From Octopus bimaculoides (lineage: Eukaryota): a stretch of 64,000 nucleotides of DNA. The stretch is taken from assembly GCF_001194135.2 (NCBI RefSeq), contig NC_068997.1, positions 49,876,639 through 49,940,638 of the forward strand, read 5' to 3'. Below, piece by piece: positions 12,210 to 29,387 of the stretch; the first letter of the stretch is position 1, and each line of letters begins with the position of its first letter. Position numbers and translations under genes: made by a program. The notes under the pieces are model-generated. The model searched no databases. It worked only from the letters and a program-made list of their open reading frames with translations, and was not told the DNA's origin.

Positions 12210-12356
12210 GTGTGTCTTTGACTCGCTTACAGAAAACGACTCCCAGGCCAGATTCCAGAAGTGGCAGGAACGCTGAGACCGGTGTATTGCTGCGCAAGGT
12301 GGCTATTTCGAAGGAGATCCTGTTAAAACTCAGGTAAATAAGTTATTTTTTATTAA
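12210..12356 (+). mobile_element. Mariner 3' fragment
   Basis: FQKWQER.DRCIAAQGGYFEGD, the mariner C-terminal motif. Confidence 0.7.
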
Positions 12357-12358
12357 CT

Positions 12359-13857
12359 ACTAGCAGAGATACCCGGCGTTGCCCGTGTTACATGCAATTG
12401 AAGGATGAGACTTTTCTCTTATATTTCCTGTAAGGAACTGGAATAGATATGATTCGAATTTCATCAAAATTGCACATGAGGGTTCTTTCCCTCTTTACAC
12501 ACCCTAAAAAATTCTAATCATGAGACATGTATCCCATACTATTAATCTTTATGCACATATTCCAAAATTTCAGTCTTCTGGAACCTGTAAAAAGGATTTT
12601 GCTCCTGAAAAATGGAGCTCATGGAGCTCTAAAATGTGGGAATGAAGGCCCCTATTGGAGGTGGGTGTGATAATGTCAACCAGAGAAGTTGAATTGTGGG
12701 GAATGTTTTTAACTTTGGTCTTATAGTATACCTGTATATATGCNNNNNNNNNNNNNNNNNNNNNNNNNNNNNNNNNNNNNNNNNNNNNNNNNNNNNNNNN
12801 NNNNNNNNNNNNNNNNNNNNNNNNNNNNNNNNNNNNNNNNNNNNNNNNNNNNNNNNNNNNNNNNNNNNNNNNNNNNNNNNNNNNNNNNNNNNNNNNNNNN
12901 NNNNNNNNNNNNNNNNNNNNNNNNNNNNNNNNNNNNNNNNNNNNNNNNNNNNNNNNNNNNNNNNNNNNNNNNNNNNNNNNNNNNNNNNNNNNNNNNNNNN
13001 NNNNNNNNNNNNNNNNNNNNNNNNNNNNNNNNNNNNNNNNNNNNNNNNNNNNNNNNNNNNNNNNNNNNNNNNNNNNNNNNNNNNNNNNNNNNNNNNNNNN
13101 NNNNNNNNNNNNNNNNNNNNNNNNNNNNNNNNNNNNNNNNNNNNNNNNNNNNNNNNNNNNNNNNNNNNNNNNNNNNNNNNNNNNNNNNNNNNNNNNNNNN
13201 NNNNNNNNNNNNNNNNNNNNNNNNNNNNNNNNNNNNNNNNNNNNNNNNNNNNNNNNNNNNNNNNNNNNNNNNNNNNNNNNNNNNNNNNNNNNNNNNNNNN
13301 NNNNNNNNNNNNTGTGAGTGTATATATGTATAGATATCTGTATGCATGTATATATGTGTACATATTACATGTACATCTATATATACATCTACACATATGT
13401 ATACATATACATGTATGCATATAGATCTATATCTCTATATATATCTATACATATACGTGTACATATACATGTATATGCATACATATACATCTCTCTCTCT
13501 GAAACCATTAAAGTGAAAGTATCTGTCATTATAGTATCGAAATGTGATTGTTTCAGTTAGTGGAATAGTTTCATTTTTAAAGTGAAAGTATTTGACATGA
13601 GTGTTTTTGTGTCACTTTTGACACGTAATACTTAAATAGTGGAGGAGATATTATGTTGCTGTGGGCTCGAACTATGCAAGAAGTTAAACATTTGTTTTAC
13701 TAAAACACAACCGGGACCCTAAGTAAGGGTAAAATTTGAATGAAATTGGTAAAATTTGAATGAAATTGGTTGTGTAGTTCTCGAGTTTTAGGGAAACACA
13801 CACACACACACACAGACAGACAGACAGACAGACATTTTCATTTTTATATATATAGAT
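12359..13857 (+). mobile_element. Non-autonomous Helitron/Helentron-like element (Lep1/DINE-like), gap inside
   Basis: ACTAGC...TACCCGGCGTTGCCCG start; 3' end with AAATTGGT..GTAGTT, (ACAG)n microsatellite and TATATATAGAT. Continuity across the gap 12744-13312 is assumed. Confidence 0.5.
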
Positions 13858-15720
13858 AACTAGTCCGGATACTTTTTGATACCACTCCGCATTTCATCAA
13901 CCTTGAAATGATGGAAGTCAAAGATGGAAGTCAAAGATGGAAGTCAAATGATGGAAGTTAAATTCAGAATGTAGAGATGTATGAAATCTACTCGGCATTT
14001 TGTCCAGCATACTAAGAATTTTTCCAGGTCACTTATGATGGATATAATAGTAAAAACGTACCAAAAGTATAAATTTGCATTTTATTGAATGTTAATTCAA
14101 CATTATTAATTTCTCAGATAAATAAATTTATGTCATAGTGGAACAGTTCATACAATTCTGTTATCAGTTTCAACTTCGATAAGGGAAGCTTTTATTTATA
14201 TAACAACAATAAAATTAATAACGCGAGGTGAACGTTATTCAAATGAAAAATCTACTGAATTATCAGAAAAATATGACAGCCTAATCTAATCTCAATATTT
14301 ATACATGTTTAAGATAAATGTGGAGGCCATGTTCAATAAAATTCTCATGACCTATTTTAGCAGTGAAATATCATCACCACCATCATCATCATCGTCGTCG
14401 TCGTTGTCCTCGACGTCGTCGTCATCATCATCATTTGAATGTTCATTTTTCCATGCTTACACGAGTTTGACAGAATTTGGTGAAGCAGATTTTCTGCAGC
14501 CCTCCCTGTTTCCAAATAACGTACTATGTTTCCCATGGCCAGACATGTTTGTCGCAAACTACTGAAAACGAAAGACAGCTTGCTTGAGAATGGCACTTGT
14601 TTAGAACGGTCACACAATGTCAAGGCAAGAAGACAGTAACACGCACGCACACACAACAGATTTCTTTTAATTTCTGCCTACCAGTCTCAAGTCTTTGATC
14701 AACCCAGGGCTATAGTAAAAGACATTTGCCGAAAACTATATGGATGAGAAATGAACTTCTTACAGCACAGCCTCACTAAATCCTACTTGAAAGAATATAT
14801 ATATATATATATATATATATANNNNNNNNNNNNNNNNNNNNNNNNNNNNNNNNNNNNNNNNNNNNNNNNNNNNNNNNNNNNNNNNNNNNNNNNNNNNNNN
14901 NNNNNNNNNNNNNNNNNNNNNNNNNNNNNNNNNNNNNNNNNNNNNNNNNNNNNNNNNNNNNNNNNNNNNNNNNNNNNNNNNNNNNNNNNNNNNNNNNNNN
15001 NNNNNNNNNNNNNNNNNNNNNNNNNNNNNNNNNNNNNNNNNNNNNNNNNNNNNNNNNNNNNNNNNNNNNNNNNNNNNNNNNNNNNNNNNNNNNNNNNNNN
15101 NNNNNNNNNNNNNNNNNNNNNNNNNNNNNNNNNNNNNNNNNNNNNNNNNNNNNNNNNNNNNNNNNNNNNNNNNNNNNNNNNNNNNNNNNNNNNNNNNNNN
15201 NNNNNNNNNNNNNNNNNNNNNNNNNNNNNNNNNNNNNNNNNNNNNNNNNNNNNNNNNNNATAAAAAATAAAAACAAAAACTTAAATAACTATATTTTTTA
15301 TTCTTTTACTTGTTTCAGTCATTTTGACTGCGGCCATGCTGGAGCACTAAATACTATATCTGATAGTTAACATCATCAGATATCAATTACATAACAACAT
15401 TTTTCAGGTGCGAGGGGCCGCTAGTGGTTGAGTTAAGAGGATAAACTCCCAGAAACGTTGGTAAAAGAGATAAAAAAAATAAACAGCTACCATAGTAAAC
15501 CAGTTTTATTCCCGCGGGTTTGCCACCGTCTTCCCCACTCGACAGACCACGTTTTCTCCCACCTCCTTCGTCACAATACTTTTTTTTTTTATCTTTGATA
15601 TATAAAAAGAACAAAGAAAAAAAAAAGAGTGTGTTTATCTAAGGGAAATCACTCTCATAGTCATCCAGTGGAAACGAGATAATTCCCGAGAAACTGACGG
15701 TGGAAAAGCAATTTCCAAAC

Positions 15721-18465
15721 ATGAATCGAAAAGATGGAAGCGAACTGGTTATTGGTGATCGTATCGAATGTGAAAATTATTTTGGGACGATAAAATTTAT
15801 AGGACAAGTTGAAGCAATGGAAGGTATTTGGTTTGGTATTGATTGGGATGAAATTCATCGGGGAAAACATGACGGTAGCTATAAAGGTAAGCGTTATTTT
15901 CAAGCAGGCCATCCTAAATCTGGTTCGTTTATTAAACCAATAAAGGCTAAATTGGGACAATCTTTCTCTGATGCTTATGTCTGTAAACTTGGCGATATCA
16001 TAGATGTGCGTTCAACAATTCTGATTCTCGATAATTATGCAATTTATGGTCTTGGTTCCCAGGAAGTGACCAGTCAGTTTTCGGCGATTGCCTCAAAAAT
16101 AACAGAACTAGATCTTTCAGGTAATTTGTTGAAGAACTGGACTCAAGTTGCGGAAATTAGTAGCTTAATTCCTAATCTGTTAAAGTTAAATGTAAGTAAT
16201 AACCGTTTAATAATTTCTGAACACGCAGAAATTTTGTCAAAATCTTTTGCCAATGTAGAGGATCTGGTTTTAAATCGAATGACCTACGACTGGGACGACA
16301 TTTTATCTGCTACGTCGATGTTTCCGTCCCTTCGAGGTTTGTACGTGTGTTTTAATAATTTGGAAAAATTGAATGATCCCACGGGGAAATTGACGAAACT
16401 GAAATTTCTCTCATTAACAGACAATCGCTTAAGTGACTGGAATGAACTTTTAAAACTTGGTCAGCTTCCACAATTGAGCACACTTTATGTGAATAACAAT
16501 CAACTGACAGCTGTCTCTTTTAATGACGTATCTTTGGAAGACGGCGAGAAAACCACATATTTTCGTTCTCTTAAGCGTTTAGATTTAAGCAGCAACCTCA
16601 TCGATAACCTGTCATCAATCGATGAGCTTAGTAAATTAATCAACCTTACCGAGTTTTCTTTCCTTCATAATCCAGCAGCAGATATAGATGAGGACAAACT
16701 ATTTAATCTAATAATTGCCAAAATTGGCAGTTTAAAAAAATATGCCAAAACTATTATCCATGATGAAGTACAGAAAGATGCTGAAATATTTTATCTTCGC
16801 ATGATTGAGAAACAGGCATTAGAGAAAAATATCGGTGAAGAAGACAGAGCTAAAACATGTTCAAGGTACAAAGAGCTAGGACAGAAATATGGTTATGAAT
16901 ATCCTGAGAAGCATTCCCTCCAAGGTAATTTAAAAGACGGCGATATTCCAGAAGAAATGATCAGAAACAAGAAATTATTTCCAGATATGAACCGAAATGA
17001 TGGAAGCAAACTGGTTATCGGTGATCGTATTGAAAGTGAGAATTATTTTGGGACGATAAAATTTATAGGAGAAGTCGACACAATGGAAGGTATTTGGTTT
17101 GGCATTGATTGGGATGAAATTCATCGGGGAAAACATGACGGTAGCTATAAAGGTAGGCGTTATTTTCAAGCAGGCCATCCTAAATCTGGTTCCTTTATTA
17201 ACCCACTTAACATTAACCTCGGACAATCTTTTCCTGATGCTTACATCTGTAAAGCTAAAGATGTTTTAAATGTGCCTTCAAGAGTTCTGATTCTCAATAA
17301 TTTTGCAGTTTATGGTCTTGGTTCCCAGAAAGTAACCAGTCATTTTTTGGTGACTGCCTCAAAATTAACTGAGCTAGATCTTTCTAAAAATCTGTTGAAG
17401 AGTTGGACTCAAGTTGTGGAAATTGCTAACATTATTCCTAATCTAATTACATTAAATTTAAGTAGTAACCGTTTAATAATTCCTGAAAATGTAGAAATGT
17501 TTGCAAAATCTTTTGCAAATGTTGAAGAACTTATTCTGAACAGAATGAACTATGACTGGGCTAACATTTTATCTGTTACATCGATGTTTCCATCCCTTCA
17601 ACGTTTGTACGTGAGTTTCAATAATTTGGAAACATTTATTAATTCCACAGGAAAATTGACAAAGCTAAAATTTCTCTCATTGTCAAACAATTGTATTAGT
17701 GACGCGAATGAACTTTTAAAACTTGGGCAACTTCCTCAGTTGAGTACACTTTATGTAACTAACAATCAATTGACATCTGTCTCTTTTAATGACGTATCTT
17801 TGGAAGATGGCAAGAAAACATCACATTTTTGTTCTCTTGAATGTCTAAGTTTAAACAAGAATAACATCAATGACCTGTCATCAATCGATGAGCTTAGCAA
17901 ACTGGCCAAGCTGACTGATCTTATTTTAGTAAATAACCCATTGGGAGCTGTATATAAGGATAAACTATTTTATATTACCGTTGGTAAAATTGGCAGTTTA
18001 AAAAAATATGATAAAACCTTTATTCGTGATGAAGAAAGGAAAAACGCTGAAGTATATTATCTAGATATGGTTGAGAGGGAGGCATTAGAAAAAAATATCG
18101 GTGAAGAAGACACAGCTAAAACATGTTCAAGGTACAAAGAACTGGTGAAGAAATATGGACATGCGAGTCCCGAATCATTAATATCTAAAACAGTTCTGCT
18201 AAAAGATAAATTAATTGTTGTTGATATCCAAACTGAAAATATTCCTGATAAAGTATTGAAGAACAAGAGATTGTCTCCAGACATAACCATTCTAAAACTG
18301 AAGTCACTTGTACAAAAACTCTTTGGAACTGAAGAAATAACAAACCTTAAACTATCTTATATCAGTAGAGAAAATCCTGAAGTAAAAGTTGAATTAGATG
18401 ATGATTTGAAGCCACTGTCTCATTACAGTATAGAAAATGGTGACAGTTTAATTGCAAAGTGGTAA
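15721..18465 (+). CDS. TBCE: Intronless tandem-fused tubulin-specific chaperone E-like protein, 914 aa: (CAP-Gly + LRR + partial UBL, 422 aa) + (CAP-Gly + LRR + complete UBL, 492 aa)
   Basis: Uninterrupted ORF; first ATG at 15721 (the track start at 15700 is a GTG). Two CAP-Gly domains (GDRIE...GIDWDEIHRGKHDGSYKG.RYF), two LRR arrays (LDLS.NLL..W..V; L..LNVS.NRL; L..LYV.NNQL; NP), LRR cap (AE..YL...RYKEL..KYG) and the TBCE C-terminal UBL ending ELDDDLKPLSHYSIENGDSLIAKW. Unit 2 begins at ATG 16987. Confidence 0.93.
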   Translation: MNRKDGSELVIGDRIECENYFGTIKFIGQVEAMEGIWFGIDWDEIHRGKHDGSYKGKRYFQAGHPKSGSFIKPIKAKLGQSFSDAYVCKLGDIIDVRSTILILDNYAIYGLGSQEVTSQFSAIASKITELDLSGNLLKNWTQVAEISSLIPNLLKLNVSNNRLIISEHAEILSKSFANVEDLVLNRMTYDWDDILSATSMFPSLRGLYVCFNNLEKLNDPTGKLTKLKFLSLTDNRLSDWNELLKLGQLPQLSTLYVNNNQLTAVSFNDVSLEDGEKTTYFRSLKRLDLSSNLIDNLSSIDELSKLINLTEFSFLHNPAADIDEDKLFNLIIAKIGSLKKYAKTIIHDEVQKDAEIFYLRMIEKQALEKNIGEEDRAKTCSRYKELGQKYGYEYPEKHSLQGNLKDGDIPEEMIRNKKLFPDMNRNDGSKLVIGDRIESENYFGTIKFIGEVDTMEGIWFGIDWDEIHRGKHDGSYKGRRYFQAGHPKSGSFINPLNINLGQSFPDAYICKAKDVLNVPSRVLILNNFAVYGLGSQKVTSHFLVTASKLTELDLSKNLLKSWTQVVEIANIIPNLITLNLSSNRLIIPENVEMFAKSFANVEELILNRMNYDWANILSVTSMFPSLQRLYVSFNNLETFINSTGKLTKLKFLSLSNNCISDANELLKLGQLPQLSTLYVTNNQLTSVSFNDVSLEDGKKTSHFCSLECLSLNKNNINDLSSIDELSKLAKLTDLILVNNPLGAVYKDKLFYITVGKIGSLKKYDKTFIRDEERKNAEVYYLDMVEREALEKNIGEEDTAKTCSRYKELVKKYGHASPESLISKTVLLKDKLIVVDIQTENIPDKVLKNKRLSPDITILKLKSLVQKLFGTEEITNLKLSYISRENPEVKVELDDDLKPLSHYSIENGDSLIAKW

Positions 18466-18582
18466 TTTTGGCTTTAATACATTCCTGTCTATGATAACTT
18501 TAAACAGGCAGTTATTCTGCTTTCGTAAAATTGAGGAAATAATAATATTAATTATAATAATAATAATTGTAAAAATAATAAT

Positions 18583-19142
18583 AACAAGAGCACTCAGAGA
18601 GCGCAAACCTCCACCAAGATAACACCAACATCTTGTCAACAATTAGTCAGAGATGATTTTTGAAATGAGAATATCTGAAATAAACTCGTCTGCTCTCACA
18701 AGCGAGAATACTAAAAACGAACTCGACCGCTCTCAAAAATTAAGTAAAACAAACCTGAAAAATAAACCAGAATCCTTCTCTGGTACCTGATAGATCCCAA
18801 TGATAGTCATGAAATGTGAAAGTGACTGTAGAAAATTTAGTAACAGTAATAAGTAGTTTATCCTTATTTAATACAAGCAAAGTTCAATTCATTATTCAAA
18901 ATAGTTACGGCCTAAAGGGAGATAATTGAGAAGGACTTGAAAATTAACATAATATAACAAATAATCCAGACTCCTTGTCCGGTACCCAAAATCTAATTAG
19001 TTCATGCCAGTGACAAGGCCAAACATTCCTGAAAGTTTCATCCAAATCCATCCAGCGGTTCTTGAGATATCTTGAACACGGACAAACAAACAAATATGAC
19101 TGAGAACAATACCTCTGCCTTCGTTAAGGCAGAGGTGATAAT
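18583..19142 (+). mobile_element. Non-autonomous Helentron-type (HINE-like) element just after the TBCE fusion gene
   Basis: AACAAGAGCACTC start, 3' hairpin ACCTCTGCCTT-cgtt-AAGGCAGAGGT; a homologous inverted copy lies at 39455-39819. Confidence 0.65.
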
Positions 19143-21429: not shown

Positions 21430-22540
21430 CGCTAGTATCACTTGACATACAAGGAGTGTCCTTTGTTTCCAATCTTCCAAGAAAAACATGACCAACCATG
21501 GAGAAATATTCTCTGGCTTAGATCTGATACAATGTTTAATATGGAATGTCTCTATTGTTTGTGTAGATTGCTGATCAGATGGAACGTTATGTGTTGAGAA
21601 ACACAATGGTTATCTATATGAAAGCTAAAAGATTTTATGACAATCTGCAGAATAGCCATGAAGCAACTTGTGATGCAAAACCTTTTCTGGTTATTGACTG
21701 CTGGTTTGAAAGGTTTAAAGAAGTGCCTTATTTTGTACAATATTAAAATAGTCAGTGAAGCTGCCACTGCTGATGTAGAGTCTGCTATTAATTATCCTGC
21801 AAAACCAAAGAAACTGATTGCTGAAAAAAGCTACATACCAGAACAAGTGTACAATTTTGATGAAGTTTGGCTTTTCTGGAAGTGTATGTCTGCCAGGACA
21901 TTTAAAAAAAAATTCTGGTGAAGAAAACTGATACCAAACTTTAACCATTTAGCATTTAGATTTTTTTTTTTTCTGTCTTGCGAGTACTTGGTGATTCTGT
22001 CAGTGCAGGTGCCACTTAACCCACCCAAGAGACATAAATGGTGGCACGTAAAAAGTGCCATGCAAATGTGGCCGTTGCCAGTGCCGCCTGACTGGTTCCC
22101 TTGCCAGTGATACATAAAAACCACCCACTATACTCTCGGAGTGGTTGACATTAGGAAGGGCATCCAGCTGTAGAAACCTTGCCAGATCAGATTGGAGCCT
22201 GGTGCAGCCTTCTGGTTCACCAGTCCTCAGTCAAACCGTCCAATCCATGCCAGCATGGAAAACAGACCTTAAATGATGATGATGATGTTCTTTCTGATAA
22301 CATCAGAATGGAATACAACCTTGAGAACACAGCTTCTTTGCTCCAGATCAAGGTGACTTGATTAACTTCAAGGTTTATTATCTGAAAAGAACTTTTGGAC
22401 AATGTAGAAAAGCAGTTGATAGGATAGATAATGCTAGCGTGAAAGATGTCTGGGAAAAGTTCCACATTATGGAATTATGATGGATGCTGTGGATGATGTC
22501 AGGTGAAGGAATCAAGTCATGGCTATGAATGGTATTGAAG
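21430..22540 (+). mobile_element. pogo/Tigger (TIGD1-like) transposase remnant, interrupted by a SINE
   Basis: LYNIKIVSEAATADVESAINYP...SYIPEQVYNFDE..LFWKCM..RTF. Confidence 0.7.
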
Positions 22541-24791: not shown

Positions 24792-25552
24792 CGGATCTTT
24801 GGGGTTTGACGGGCAACATTTGTTTTCTTAACGAAACACTTTCAAACTTGGGACACTGGTAGAATGTGTCATATAAAACTTCTTCTCTTAACCTTCTTAA
24901 CAAAAAATTGTACATCGCAAGTTATTTCATGTTAAATTTGTCGTATTTCTGTAATTTCAACCAATCACTGACGTCTATTCAGCTGAATACAGTTACTGCT
25001 GTTCGGTGTCAAGTGTGTTATTCCCTGTTTAATTATATCATTATTCCCTAGTAAGGGTTTAGGGTTTTAGGGTTCGGGTTTTAGGGTGTTAGGGTTAGGG
25101 TTATGAGTTATAGGGTTAGAGTTAAGGTTATGGCAAAAATAATCATAAAACTAACCCTAACTCTAAAACCNNNNNNNNNNNNNNNNNNNNNNNNNNNNNN
25201 NNNNNNNNNNNNNNNNNNNNNNNNNNNNNNNTAAAGCTAAAACCAATACAAACGCACGAACGATGTCATAAATAAGAGTAACACGGGTAGTTGTTGACAA
25301 ACAACGGGACTAATTTTATTCAAGGGAAAAGATCCCATGACACCGTTACTCAATTAATTGTTTTCACCTCAATAGACGTCAGTGGTGGGTTGAAATTACC
25401 GAAATACGACAATTTTTTACATAAAATAACTTCGAATACAAAATTTTTTATCTGTTCTATACCACAAAATATACAAATATTCGAAGTTTGAAAGGTTTTC
25501 GGTACCAAAAACACTACAAAAAAAATGTTGCCCGTCAAACCCCAAAGATCCG
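24792..25552. mobile_element. Non-autonomous DNA transposon with perfect 30-bp TIRs, 6-bp TSD (TTGCCT) and internal telomere-like repeats, inserted in the 3' UTR of the minus-strand TBCE
   Basis: CGGATCTTTGGGGTTTGACGGGCAACATTT at both ends; TTGCCT directly outside each end; the flanks rejoin to match the paralog's 3' UTR. Confidence 0.88.
25052..25170. repeat. Degenerate interstitial (TTAGGG)n followed by (CCCTAA)n
   Basis: ttagggttttagggttcgggttttagggtgttagggttaggg... then ctaaccctaactctaaaacc up to a gap. Confidence 0.8.
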
Positions 25553-25598: not shown

Positions 25599-27077
25599 TT
25601 ACCATTTTGCAACGAGGTTATCACCATTTTCTATACTGTAATACGACAGTTGATGCAAATCATTCTCTAATTGAACTTCCACTTTAGAATTTTTTTTACT
25701 GATATAAGATAATTCTAGGTTAGTTATTTCTTCAATTTTAAAGAGTTTTTGTACAAATAACTTCAGTTTTAGAATGGTCATGGTTGGAGATAATTTCTTG
25801 TTCTTGAACACTTTATCAGGAATATTAACGGTTTGAATATCAACTGCAACTAATTTATCTCGTAGAACACTAGTTTTGGTTATCAATGATTCAGGACTTG
25901 CATGTCCATAAAACCTTACCAGTTCTTTGTATCTCGAACATGTTTTAGCTCTGTCTTCTTCACTGATATTTTTCTCTAATGCGTGTTTCTCAACCATGCG
26001 TAGATAAAATATTTCAGCATTTTTCCGTTCTTCGTCACGGAAGTCGGCTTTTGCATATTTTTTTAAACTGCCAATTTTGGCAATTATCAAATTAAATAGT
26101 TTGTCCTCATCTATATCTGCTGCTGGATTATGAAGGAAAGAAAACTCGGTAAGGTTGGTTAATTTACTAAGCTCATCGATTGATGACAGGTTATCGATGA
26201 GGTTGCTGCTTAAATCTAAACACTTAAGAGAACGAAAATATGTGGTTTTCTCGCCGTCTTCCAAAGATACGTCATTAAAAGAGACAGCTGTCAGTTGATT
26301 GTTATTCACATAAAGTGTGCTCAATTGTGGAAGCTGACCAAGTTTTAAAAGTTCATTCCAGTCACTTAAGCGATTGTCTGTTAATGAGAGAAATTTCAGT
26401 TTCGTCAATTTCCCCTTGGGAGCATTCAATTTATCCAAATTATTAAAACACACGTACAAACCTCGAAGGGACGGAAACATCGACGTAGCAGATAAAATGT
26501 CAACCCAGTCGTAGTTCATTCGGTTTAAAACCAGATCTTGTACACTAGCAAAATATTTTGACAAGTTTTCCGCGTGTTCAGGAATTGTTAAACGGTTATC
26601 ACTTATATTCAATTTTAACAAATTAGGAATTAAGCTAGTAATTTCCGCAACTTGAGTCCAGTTCTTCAACAAATTATCAGAAAGATCTAGTTCTGTTATT
26701 TTTGAGGCAATCGCCGAAAACTGACTGGTCACTTCCTGGGAACCAAGACCATAAATTGCATGATTATTGAGAATCAGAATTCTTGAAGGCACATCAATAA
26801 CATCTTTAACTTTACAGAGATAAGCGTCAGGGAAAGATTGTCCTAATTTGGCCTTTACCGGTTTAATAAACGAACCTGATTTAGGATGGTCTGCTTGAAA
26901 ATAACGCCTACCTTTATAGCTACCGTCATGTTTTCCCCGATGAATTTCATCCCAATCAATACCAAGCCAAACTCCTTCCATTGCGTCAACTTCTCCTATA
27001 AATTTTATCGTCCCAAAATAATCATCACATTCAATACGATCACCAATAACCAGTTCGCTTCCATCTTCTCGATTCAT
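25599..27077 (-). CDS. TBCE: Intronless single-unit tubulin-specific chaperone E-like protein, 492 aa (CAP-Gly, LRR, UBL)
   Basis: Open ORF from ATG 27077 (track start 27098 is TTG) to TAA 25599. GKHDG CAP-Gly motif, LRRs and UBL ending QLENDLHQLSYYSIENGDNLVAKW. Same length as unit 2 of the fused gene and collinear with it. Confidence 0.93.
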   Translation of the reverse strand: MNREDGSELVIGDRIECDDYFGTIKFIGEVDAMEGVWLGIDWDEIHRGKHDGSYKGRRYFQADHPKSGSFIKPVKAKLGQSFPDAYLCKVKDVIDVPSRILILNNHAIYGLGSQEVTSQFSAIASKITELDLSDNLLKNWTQVAEITSLIPNLLKLNISDNRLTIPEHAENLSKYFASVQDLVLNRMNYDWVDILSATSMFPSLRGLYVCFNNLDKLNAPKGKLTKLKFLSLTDNRLSDWNELLKLGQLPQLSTLYVNNNQLTAVSFNDVSLEDGEKTTYFRSLKCLDLSSNLIDNLSSIDELSKLTNLTEFSFLHNPAADIDEDKLFNLIIAKIGSLKKYAKADFRDEERKNAEIFYLRMVEKHALEKNISEEDRAKTCSRYKELVRFYGHASPESLITKTSVLRDKLVAVDIQTVNIPDKVFKNKKLSPTMTILKLKLFVQKLFKIEEITNLELSYISKKNSKVEVQLENDLHQLSYYSIENGDNLVAKW

Positions 27078-29387
27078 GTTTGGAGATTTCAGTTTCAAGG
27101 AATTATCTCGCTTTCACCGGGCATCACTCCACTTATTTCCCTTAGATAGATAATCTTTTTTTTTTTTTTTAATTACATCAACCCATTTAAACGATTTCGG
27201 GACGGAATTTTAAGAATATTCATACTTAATATTTAATTATATATTTGATGTAATTTTTTTAATAGTATCTTCTTTGGTTTCAGTTTGTTAACGGTCAATT
27301 TCCTAGTTCAATGCATTTCTGCAAGGGAACATCTTATACTCGGAGAACTTTATTCTATCAACACCGGTTTTAAGGAATGTTCTGTCCATCTTCACCAACA
27401 TCAGTCACACACACATCNNNNNNNNNNGAAATTACTGGCCTTGTGCCAAAATTTGAAACTATTGTTTTTTTTTGGGTTTTAAAATGTGGCATATCTACAG
27501 TTTGGTGCCCCGATCCGATTTTTTACCTTCGTAACATCCTGTTTCGCTGCATATTTCTTAATGAAATTTTGCAGAGCTGCATTTTTAAATGTGTTGCTTT
27601 CGATTATGTTCATGCATCCCGACTTTACGAATAGCTTACTCCTATATAAATCGACGATATCCAATAACTTGAATATTTTCGATTGTAACGTAAACACTGG
27701 TTAGTTTTATTTGGGAGCAGCACATTTATTTCTTTATTGCCCACAGGGGGCTAAGCATAGAGGGGACAAACAAGGACAGACAAAGGGTTTAAGCATTTCG
27801 CCCGGGCATGCTAACGATTCTGCCAGCTGACATTCCCAGACCAAATACTCCCAACTCCAGAACTGAGCAATTCTACAACTCTATAATAAGCACTGTGTTG
27901 TATTTTGCGTTTATTCTTTTACTTGTTTCAGGCATTTGACTGCGATCATGCTGGAGCACCGCCTTTTAGTCGAGCAAATCGACCCCCAAGACTTATTCTT
28001 TGTAAGCTTGATACTTATTCTATCGGTGTCTTTTGCCGAACCTCTAAGTTACAGGGACATAAACATACCAACATCGGTTGTCAAGGGAGGTGGGGGAACA
28101 AAGACAAATAAATATATATATGTATGTATGACGGGCTTCTTTTAGTTTCCGTCTCCCAAATCCATTCACAAAGTTCTGGTCAGTCAGAGGCTTTAGTAGA
28201 AGACATTTGCCCAAGGTGCCACGCAGTGGGACTGAACCCAGATCCATGTGGCTAGGAAGCAAGCTTCTTACCACACATCTATGCCTGTGTCTATACACTA
28301 TTTTATACAGTGTTAAACTACATTTTAACCTCAAACTAATTGGTATCATGTTAAGGTATTCACCTGAAGATAATCAGTTGATGAAGTTAAAATTATTCAA
28401 ATAAAAACAAATGAAATTACCCAACTTAAAACAAACAAAAAATCCCAGTTCCTTTGAGTCAGACAACAAAATAATAAGCGTATATTAGAAAAAAATCTCC
28501 ATTGGTCATGAATGACCATGGGATTGCACATACACGGTTACCCTCTGAGGCACAAGTCTCAGCTGTAGCAAGGGGAAAACATTTTTAAAAGAAAATTTCT
28601 CTTGTTGGTTGAGAAGTGCTCAGTTTTGTTTAAGAGCATATTGAGTAGTGTACCTTGGACAACACTACTCATTGCGCTGTTTTAAGACAATAAGGGAGTA
28701 ATTTGAGAGAGATTTAGCAGTTAGTATATATCATTGTTGGCACTCCGTCGCTTACGACGTCGAGGGTTCCAGTTGATCCGATCAACGGAACAGCCTGCTC
28801 GTGAAATTAACGTGCAAGTGGCTAAGCACTCCACAGACACGTGTACTCTTAATGTAGTTCTCGGGGATATTCGGCGTGACACAGTGTGACAAGGCTGACC
28901 CTTTGAATTACAGGCACAACAGAAACAGGAAGTAAGAGTGAGAGAAAGTTGTGGTGAAAGAGTACAGCAGGCGAACCCTGCTGTACTCTTTCGCCTGCTG
29001 TACTCCCTGCCGGAGCCACGTGGAGCTTTAGGTGTTTTCGCTCAATAAACACTCACAACGCCCAGTCTGGGAATCGAAACCGTGAGTCCGCTGCCCTAAC
29101 CCCTGGGCCATTGCGCCTCCACTAGAAGCTCTCTAGTGAGAATGAAATGTACATCGTCGTTGAGAGTTATCTCCCTTGAAATTACACCTCGCATGTCCTG
29201 TTAAGACCATGTGTTGGTGAATTCCTATCTTATTCGTCCCATCATGGAATAATTAACATCAAGGAATCAAATATCGAAGAAGAAATCAAAAAAGGGCTTA
29301 CTAAACTTTGTATTAGTTAAGTTCTATTCTTTCCTGTGTCTCAGTTTCCCTGACTGTTATTTGTGTTTATTAATTTTCATCTTAAAA

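What the first reader, a model, noticed from the sequence alone, without database searches (positions are those of the whole stretch)
15661..16989. Both the fusion junction and the 5' leader look like the start of the UBL domain: concatemer or circular-template origin
Seen: the junction DIPEEMIRNKKLFPD-M (16942-16989) aligns with the UBL start of the minus copy, NIPDKVFKNKKLSPT-M (25779-25826), at 8/16 aa and 36/48 nt. It sits where unit 1's UBL should continue, so the Met of the UBL 'P-x-M-T' motif doubles as the start Met of the next unit. The in-frame sequence upstream of the first ATG (IIPEKLTVEKQ-FPN-M, 15679-15723) resembles the same segment (28/45 nt to the junction), and the minus copy has a shortened version of this leader. 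Inference: an ordinary 5' UTR should not resemble an internal domain, so the founder probably had at least one more upstream unit. That fits rolling reverse transcription of a back-spliced circular TBCE RNA (circRNA-derived retrocopies are known, usually as pseudogenes), an eccDNA concatemer, or serial tandem duplication with loss of the first unit. A coding, retained product of that route would be unusual.
Basis: partly seen in the sequence, partly recalled or inferred. Interest (0 to 1): 0.78.

Follow-up and report, generated by a model that had tools for sequence, protein, structure and literature searches.

The report
Octopus double TBCE gene with relic junction
Octopuses carry a conserved gene made of two head-to-tail copies of the tubulin-folding factor TBCE, and a short leftover of the same copy-to-copy joint sits in front of both TBCE genes, which points to repeated DNA-level duplication and loss rather than a circular-RNA origin.

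Summary
The fusion junction (16942-16986) is the UBL start: a blind local alignment against the minus copy lands exactly there (z=10). The 45 nt in front of the first ATG also resemble the UBL start (anchored shuffle tests z=4-6). The resemblance is clearer in O. vulgaris: AAATTATCTCCAAaCATGA against AAATTATCTCCAAcCATGA.

The window is Octopus bimaculoides. The 914-aa fused gene and the 492-aa single gene are both intact in O. vulgaris and O. sinensis, with dN/dS of 0.24-0.34.

TBCE was already intronless before these copies arose. Argonauta and two further relatives each have one intronless copy without the UBL-like leader. The minus copy M sits at the Argonauta-syntenic locus. The units diverged at dS about 0.45, against more than 1.8 to Argonauta.

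So the [quoted passage not shown] reading is reasonable. The circRNA route is not supported. One caveat: the old mollusc intron positions lie only 2-8 nt from both Met codons.

U1 and M exchange sequence by gene conversion. This is a good example of a known kind of event and is of moderate interest.

The parts
15630..15675 (+). Distal leader of U1. Homologous to the M leader from about -91/-107. It is not TBCE-like. It carries two near-copies of the motif AAGGGAGATAA, which also lies upstream of the Argonauta and L003/L004 genes.
15676..15720 (+). UBL-start-like patch ('solo junction') directly 5' of the U1 start codon. Non-coding and evolving at least as fast as its flanks.
15721..16867 (+). 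Unit 1 body: CAP-Gly domain, LRR domain and the start of the linker.
16868..16941 (+). U1 linker, shortened by two 15-nt deletions relative to U2, M and the outgroups. High U1-M identity ends at 16907.
16942..16986 (+). Junction: remnant of the U1 UBL start (DIPEEMIRNKKLFPD). Identical in amino-acid sequence in three Octopus species.
16987..18465 (+). Unit 2: complete TBCE (CAP-Gly, LRR, UBL). Its ATG sits where the U1 UBL Met codon would be. Its own UBL start is at 18238-18285.
18466..18531 (+). 3' flank shared with the M locus. Alignable for about 45 nt in O. bimaculoides and 66 nt in O. vulgaris.
18526..18590 (+). A- and AAT-rich tract that starts where the homology with M ends. It could be a decayed poly(A) tail or just a microsatellite.
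25599..27077 (-). M: single complete TBCE gene (492 aa). It is the positional orthologue of the single Argonauta gene. Its UBL start is at 25779-25826.
27078..27109 (-). UBL-start-like patch in the M leader. Shortened here by a 12-nt deletion specific to O. bimaculoides.
27110..27170 (-). Distal M leader. Homologous to the U1 leader and carries the two motif copies (27103-27113 and 27133-27143).

Best explanation
Shown:
- In an ancestor of the genus Octopus, an already intronless TBCE gene was copied head to tail at the DNA level. The segment from the start ATG to the Met codon at the beginning of the UBL domain became a repeat unit.
- The two breakpoints share ATGA in every lineage examined. 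One Met codon therefore ends one unit and starts the next, in frame. The result is U1-U2: two CAP-Gly and two LRR modules with one UBL.
- The same 40-50 nt of UBL start also lies, non-coding and decaying, directly in front of the start codons of U1 and of M. M is the single-copy gene at the ancestral locus.
- U1 and M repeatedly overwrite each other by gene conversion between inverted repeats.
- All three units are kept under purifying selection.

Inferred:
- The patch in front of U1 and M is a relic unit boundary, which means these units once had a unit in front of them.
- A gene with this patch has a direct repeat flanking its body. Unequal recombination between the patch and the true UBL start can then add or remove whole units with a seamless Met-to-Met joint.
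- I cannot tell whether the second locus was seeded by a DNA copy or by an mRNA copy of M.
For: - Junction equals UBL start: z=10; collinear tail with two 15-nt deletions.
- Leader patch resembles the UBL start: z=4-6, 0-2/3000 shuffles; best blind hit is in register for O. vulgaris; 18/19 match AAATTATCTCCAAaCATGA.
- The patch is absent from the Argonauta, L003 and L004 leaders. Those keep an upstream in-frame ATG plus 7 codons.
- ATGA is present at both Met codons in all lineages.
- The fused 914-aa gene and the 492-aa gene are both present and intact in O. vulgaris and O. sinensis.
- dN/dS between orthologues is 0.24, 0.34 and 0.31 for U1, U2 and M.
- dS is 0.41-0.47 between units, 0.14-0.18 between species and above 1.8 to Argonauta.
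- M-U2 identity exceeds M-Argonauta identity in every 150-nt window.
- M is collinear with the Argonauta gene and its RNase_T neighbour.
- Gene conversion: U1-M tracts of 98-100% identity that differ between species, and within-species identity above cross-species identity.
- The patch evolves at 82-84% between species, against 89-93% for its flanks, so it looks like a relic rather than a functional element.
- The junction shares the derived Asp codon GAY with the U2 UBL start. M, Argonauta and L003/L004 keep ACC, TCC or ACA.
- By the gap-free O. vulgaris sequence, no TBCE unit is hidden in the assembly gap upstream of U1.
Against: - No upstream unit is actually seen, only the 40-50 nt patch. 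Positions -110..-49 are not TBCE-like.
- Getting the same patch in front of both U1 and M needs either a transient two- or three-unit stage plus a deletion, or a transfer by conversion. The order of events is not resolved.
- U1 is nowhere clearly closer to U2 than M is. Any original U1-U2 sisterhood must therefore have been overwritten by conversion from M.
- Homology between the two loci is limited to -91..+66, and an A-rich tract follows U2. That pattern also fits an RNA-mediated copy.
- Both breakpoints lie within 2-8 nt of ancestral intron positions. The DNA model has to treat this as coincidence or as selection for domain-boundary joints.
Confidence: 0.6

Rival explanations
1. RNA-level joint. 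Exons 2-12 of an intron-containing TBCE were joined tail to head, either by back-splicing into a circRNA copied by rolling reverse transcription, or by exon repetition in a linear mRNA. The product was then retroposed with 5' truncation inside the upstream unit.
For: - In Haliotis and Sinanodonta the introns flanking this segment are both phase 1, so the joint would be in frame.
- The acceptor lies 2 nt before the codon aligned with the Octopus start Met.
- The donor lies 8 nt before the UBL Met, or 5 nt (same length as observed) if Pro is aligned with Pro.
- CircRNA-derived retrocopies exist (PMC4897178).
- 5' truncation would explain a patch of arbitrary length.
Against: - The gene was already intronless. 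Argonauta, L003 and L004 each have one intronless copy with an exon-1-like N-terminus and no patch.
- M is syntenic with the Argonauta gene.
- The units are far younger than that split.
- No intron-containing cephalopod TBCE appeared in three protein searches.
- U2 and M continue into the rest of the UBL and the 3' flank, which a circle of exons 2-12 cannot supply.
- Under the ungapped alignment the observed joint is one codon longer than predicted, and the codon before the ATG looks UBL-derived.
Confidence: 0.08
2. Retro-duplication of the intronless M mRNA with reverse-transcriptase template switching. The enzyme copied to the start codon, then jumped by ATGA microhomology to the UBL Met of another TBCE mRNA. 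It did this once or more, producing the patch and/or the second unit in one insertion. The patch later passed to M by gene conversion. No unit was ever lost.
For: - Homology between the U and M loci is confined to a transcript-sized span, -91..+66.
- An A/AAT-rich tract begins where that homology ends.
- ATGA microhomology is present at both sites.
- U1-M conversion is frequent and reaches into the leader.
Against: - No convincing target-site duplication. The candidate in O. vulgaris lies inside a lineage-specific insertion.
- No canonical poly(A) signal was seen.
- Repeated internal template jumps at the same site are not the usual pattern (my own knowledge).
- M, at the ancestral locus with its own upstream region, also has the patch.
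Confidence: 0.14
3. No lost unit. The patch was written into the leaders by ectopic gene conversion or templated break repair. The donor was the junction or a UBL start, and the tract ran from the homologous 5' coding region upstream past the ATG.
For: - Conversion is demonstrably active among these copies.
- The first 225 nt of all three units are unusually similar: 90-93% identity and dS of 0.22-0.27, against 0.45 elsewhere.
Against: - A conversion tract normally ends within homology, and there was none upstream of the ATG before the patch existed.
- The leaders resemble intact UBL starts more than the junction (z=5-6 against 3-4.7) and lack the junction's own changes.
Confidence: 0.13
4. 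The leader resemblance is chance, or convergence on a good start-codon context. Only the junction is truly UBL-derived.
For: - In O. bimaculoides alone the blind local search is not significant.
- The middle of the patch aligns poorly and needs a 3-nt gap.
Against: - Anchored tests give 0-2 of 3000 shuffles for four leaders.
- O. vulgaris has an 18/19 identical run ending at the ATG.
- The best blind hit lands in register in O. vulgaris.
- The feature is absent in three outgroup genes.
Confidence: 0.04

Closest known systems
Internal (partial) tandem gene duplication that gives an in-frame repeated-module gene, followed by unequal crossing-over and concerted evolution
   Same: Head-to-tail units on one strand. 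Seamless in-frame joint with microhomology (ATGA). Units are closer to each other than to the outgroup orthologue. Gene-conversion tracts are present. The product is retained under purifying selection.
   Different: A short copy of the unit boundary also sits in the non-coding leader of the first unit and of a separate inverted paralogue. That copy provides a direct repeat around the gene body. I do not know of this being described for TBCE.
CircRNA-derived retrocopies (Dong et al. 2016, PMC4897178)
   Same: Non-colinear order, with a late part of the gene joined to an early part. The joint lies close to where ancestral exon borders were. There is little evidence of a poly(A) tail.
   Different: The source gene had no introns at the time. 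The copies include sequence from outside any possible circle. The product is coding and conserved rather than a pseudogene. The joint is not demonstrably at exon borders.
Orphan or relocated retrogene replacing its parent
   Same: Coleoid TBCE is a single-exon gene. Gastropod and bivalve TBCE have about 14 exons spread over 12-29 kb. It also lies next to different neighbours.
   Different: This describes the older event that made TBCE intronless in coleoids. It does not describe the Octopus-specific fusion or the leader patch. Poly(A) and target-site duplication for that old event were not looked for.
Chimeric retrocopies formed by reverse-transcriptase template switching
   Same: They would give microhomology joints and a transcript-sized copy followed by an A-rich tail.
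   Different: No target-site duplication was found. Repeated jumps to the same internal site of the same mRNA would be required.

Membership tests
Tubulin-specific chaperone E (TBCE) | CAP-Gly domain, then LRR domain, then a C-terminal ubiquitin-like domain | tested here: met
   Pfam finds CAP_GLY twice, LRR_4/8/9 twice and Ubiquitin_2 once in the 914-aa product, and one of each in M. The best named relatives are TBCE proteins of molluscs and vertebrates.
CircRNA-derived retrocopy | Non-colinear joint exactly at the back-splice exon borders of an intron-containing parent | tested here: inconclusive
   Using Haliotis and Sinanodonta as proxy parents, the acceptor is 2 nt before the start-Met position. 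The donor is 8 nt before the UBL Met, or 5 nt with a gapped alignment. This is close, but there is a one-codon ambiguity.
CircRNA-derived retrocopy | An intron-containing parent gene existed in the lineage when the copy was made | tested here: not met
   Intronless single-copy genes occur in Argonauta, L003 and L004. M is syntenic with the Argonauta gene. Unit dS is 0.41-0.47 against more than 1.8 to Argonauta. No other cephalopod TBCE was found.
CircRNA-derived retrocopy | Sequence restricted to the exons inside the circle | tested here: not met
   U2 and M run on through the rest of the UBL domain and a shared 45-66 nt 3' flank.
LINE-type processed retrocopy (for the U locus as a copy of M) | Homology limited to the transcript, a 3' poly(A) tail, and flanking target-site duplication | tested here: inconclusive
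   Homology is limited to -91..+66, and an A/AAT-rich tract follows. No significant flanking direct repeat was found in O. bimaculoides. The O. vulgaris candidate lies in a later insertion. Transcript ends are unknown.
Processed retrogene (coleoid TBCE as a whole) | Intronless copy of a multi-exon gene, at a new genomic location | tested here: met
   The Haliotis gene spans 12 kb and the Sinanodonta gene 29 kb, each with about 14 coding pieces. Both lie next to an AREL1/HECT gene. The coleoid genes are single ORFs, and in Argonauta and Octopus they lie next to an RNase_T-domain gene. Synteny was checked only for immediate neighbours.
Partial tandem duplication / NAHR array | Same-strand head-to-tail units, an in-frame joint with shared bases at the breakpoints, and paralogues younger than the outgroup split | tested here: met
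Concerted evolution by gene conversion | Paralogues more alike within a species than between species, in discrete tracts | tested here: met
   U1-M identity is 99-100% at positions 1-150 and 376-800 in O. vulgaris, and 98-100% at 600-900 in O. bimaculoides. Cross-species U1-M identity is 88.5-89.4%.

The most novel reading that the evidence does not exclude
The joint was made at the RNA level. Exons 2-12 of an ancestral TBCE are bounded by two phase-1 introns. They were joined tail to head by back-splicing or exon repetition, reverse transcribed as a concatemer and inserted. Later gene conversion made the units look young. That would make this a circular- or repeated-exon RNA product that stayed protein-coding across at least three Octopus species.
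Probability: 0.08. Interest if true: 0.85.

Novelty: new member of a known kind. Interest (0 to 1): 0.42.

Why it matters
This is a clean, datable example of how a repeated-module gene forms and keeps changing. One Met codon serves as both the end and the start of a unit. A short relic of that boundary sits in the 5' leader and acts as a direct repeat that can drive further gain or loss of units. Inverted paralogues homogenise each other.

It also shows that Octopus species carry three TBCE units in two genes. One gene encodes an unusual two-headed cofactor E that selection has kept. This may bear on tubulin handling in cephalopods.

For the scan, it is a caution. A non-colinear joint in an intronless gene looks like a circRNA signature, and here it even falls near old intron positions, yet phylogeny and dating argue for DNA-level events.

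Tried and rejected
- Distal leader (-110..-49) against the linker that precedes the UBL start or the junction: not significant and inconsistent (z from -1.6 to 2.7). The patch is therefore only 40-50 nt, and its left edge is uncertain.
- Homology between the U and M loci beyond -92 or +70: none. The apparent shared TATA-like element is not statistically supported.
- Target-site duplication around the U locus. TATCTTTTATATATAAAA / TATCTATATATATAAAA in O. vulgaris and O. sinensis has p of about 0.02-0.05. The downstream copy lies in a roughly 510-nt insertion that is absent from O. bimaculoides and from the older upstream duplicate. Rejected.
- A TBCE unit hidden in the assembly gap 14822-15259: the gap-free O. 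vulgaris sequence shows none.
- Transcript evidence: exact-protein look-ups returned only the genome assemblies, so the 5' and 3' ends of the mRNAs are unknown.
- More octopod species: three protein searches gave only O. bimaculoides, O. vulgaris, O. sinensis, Argonauta hians and two unidentified assemblies.
- Literature: nothing on TBCE in octopus. The run and assembly accessions of L003 and L004 were not found in papers, so their organisms are not known to me. I treat them only as deeper outgroups.
- Alignment of the Argonauta leader to the Octopus leaders: weak. Only the AAGGGAGATAA-type motif and a possible CCGGTGA are shared.


Full report
**What is in the window**

- A 914-aa ORF on the plus strand (ATG 15721, stop 18465) consists of two TBCE units. 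U1 (15721-16986) has CAP-Gly and LRR domains. U2 (16987-18465) has CAP-Gly, LRR and a ubiquitin-like (UBL) domain.
- A single complete TBCE gene, M, lies on the minus strand (27077-25599, 492 aa).
- The exact proteins are encoded on chromosome CM046617.1 of assembly GCA_001194135.2. From my own knowledge of the accession, this is Octopus bimaculoides. That fits the 90-94% identity to named O. vulgaris and O. sinensis genes.

**Check of the observation**

- Junction. The 45 nt before the second ATG, aligned blind against the whole M coding sequence, hit aa 418-431, the UBL start, in register. The score was 25 against 10.7+-1.4 for 500 dinucleotide shuffles.
- A multiple alignment shows that the U1 tail follows the linker and UBL start up to the Met codon, with two 15-nt deletions.
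- Leader. In O. bimaculoides alone a blind search is not significant.
- Anchored at the ATG, the 48-nt leader gives z=4.2-4.4 against the UBL starts of M and U2, and z=3.5 against the junction.

**Related genomes make the leader signal stronger**

- O. vulgaris and O. sinensis have the same 914-aa fused gene and the same 492-aa gene.
- Their leaders end in AAATTATCTCCAAACATGA. The UBL start reads AAATTATCTCCAACCATGA.
- Anchored z-scores rise to 4.4-6.0, with 0-2 of 3000 shuffles reaching them.
- The best blind local hit of the O. vulgaris leaders now falls on the UBL start, in register.
- The short M leader in the window is a 12-nt deletion specific to O. bimaculoides.
- Only the proximal 40-50 nt are UBL-like. 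Positions -110..-49 are not.
- The leader is non-coding. It has in-frame stops in three copies and a 1-nt indel in another.
- Between species the patch is 82-84% identical, against 89-93% for its flanks. It behaves like a relic.

**History of the gene**

- Argonauta hians has one intronless TBCE (L002). Two further assemblies of unknown organism (L003, L004) also have one intronless copy each and branch deeper.
- None of these leaders resembles its own UBL start.
- They keep an upstream in-frame ATG plus seven codons (MSDNWQK-M, MASGFVT-M). Octopus lacks this.
- Haliotis and Sinanodonta TBCE are multi-exon genes of 12 and 29 kb, each next to an AREL1/HECT gene.
- TBCE therefore became intronless, and apparently moved, before the coleoids diverged.
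- The exons of the RNase_T-domain gene upstream of the Argonauta gene map in order to window 39981-35082 and about 29500, followed by M. M is therefore the positional orthologue, and U1-U2 is the derived, inverted locus about 7 kb away.

**Dating and selection**

- dS is 0.14-0.18 between O. bimaculoides and O. vulgaris orthologues.
- dS is 0.41-0.47 between U2 and U1 or M, and above 1.8 between Octopus and Argonauta.
- In every 150-nt window M is closer to U2 than to Argonauta.
- Orthologue dN/dS is 0.24 for U1, 0.34 for U2 and 0.31 for M. It is 0.31 for the U1 tail.
- The junction peptide is identical in the three species.
- The fused gene is therefore a retained coding gene that predates the split of these species.

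**Gene conversion**

- U1 and M are 99-100% identical at positions 1-150 and 376-800 in O. vulgaris, and 98-100% identical at 600-900 in O. bimaculoides.
- Cross-species U1-M identity is only 88.5-89.4%.
- The apparent closeness of U1 to M is therefore partly secondary. It stops at 16907, where the first U1 deletion begins.
- The junction shares the derived codon GAY (Asp) before the Met with the U2 UBL start. M, Argonauta and L003/L004 have ACC, TCC or ACA. This is a small hint that the junction and the U2 UBL start are sister sequences.

**Mechanism**

- ATGA is present at both the start Met and the UBL Met in all lineages. This gives a microhomology for a head-to-tail joint in which one Met codon serves both units.
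- The same boundary sequence, without a unit in front of it, lies before U1 and before M. The simplest reading is that the boundary is older than, or was spread among, the present copies. That means an array that gained and lost units.
- Once a gene carries the patch, its body is flanked by a 45-nt direct repeat. Unequal recombination can then recreate or remove the fusion seamlessly.
- I give this composite explanation 0.6. The existence, age, coding status and DNA-level context are well supported. The lost upstream unit itself is inferred.

**The circRNA idea**

- Its defining features are in PMC4897178.
In both Haliotis and Sinanodonta, a phase-1 intron lies in the codon just before the residue aligned with the Octopus start Met.
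- Another phase-1 intron lies two codons before the UBL Met, or one codon before it if Pro is aligned with Pro. Joining these exons would be in frame.
- Against the idea:
  - the gene had no introns when the units arose;
  - U2 and M include sequence from outside any circle;
  - the ungapped alignment predicts a joint one codon shorter than observed.
- I rate the RNA-level joint at about 0.08.

**An open point**

- Homology between the U and M loci is confined to -91..+66, and an A/AAT-rich tract follows U2.
- The U locus could therefore have been seeded by an mRNA copy of M, possibly with template switching.
- No valid target-site duplication was found. The O. vulgaris candidate lies inside a later insertion.

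**Verdict**

- This is a new, well-preserved example of a known kind of event: partial tandem duplication with concerted evolution in an old retrogene.
- Two unusual details stand out: the relic junction in the leaders of two paralogues, and the closeness of both breakpoints to ancient intron positions.

Noticed in passing
L006 7399-8080; L008 1372-1488 (no counterpart found in window 12275-13951, which holds gap 12744-13312): O. vulgaris and O. sinensis carry an extra fragment about 2.5 kb upstream of U1, in the same orientation. It holds the last 39 codons of U2 plus its 3' flank. It is 96.6% identical to the species' own U2 end, so it is a younger partial duplication. The locus is still being rearranged.
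   Followed up: partly
L002, L003, L004 versus L009, L010: TBCE is a single-exon gene in Octopus, Argonauta and two deeper relatives. In Haliotis and Sinanodonta it is a gene of about 14 exons next to an AREL1/HECT gene. No intron-bearing cephalopod TBCE turned up. Coleoid TBCE looks like a retrogene that replaced its parent.
   Followed up: partly
window 15721-16907 versus 27077-25891; L006 versus L007: There are lineage-specific gene-conversion tracts between U1 and the inverted copy M. In each species they reach 98-100% identity over 150-425 nt.
   Followed up: yes
alignment A3, columns 106-137 and 418-425: All coleoid TBCE proteins lack a segment of about 32 residues between CAP-Gly and LRR, and an 8-residue segment before the linker. 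Gastropod and bivalve TBCE have both segments.
   Followed up: no
window 15641-15651, 15672-15682, 27133-27143, 27103-27113; exact copies at 18915, 29167, 30567: The motif AAGGGAGATAA lies upstream of the Argonauta and L003 genes, with a looser form upstream of L004. It occurs twice, about 30 nt apart, in each Octopus leader. The second copy abuts the UBL-like patch. It may be a promoter-proximal element.
   Followed up: partly
L006 12825-13335: O. vulgaris has an insertion of about 510 nt in the 3' flank of U2 relative to O. bimaculoides. It begins with a TATATA-rich sequence that mimics a target-site duplication.
   Followed up: partly
window 21637-21921: A short ORF between the two TBCE loci contains a stretch (…YNFDEVWLFWK…) that reminds me of pogo/Tigger-type transposases. 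This was not tested.
   Followed up: no
window, 16 runs of N (for example 14822-15259, 25171-25231, 27418-27427): The assembly is heavily gapped around both TBCE loci. The gap 460 nt upstream of U1 corresponds to about 560 nt of non-TBCE sequence in O. vulgaris.
   Followed up: yes
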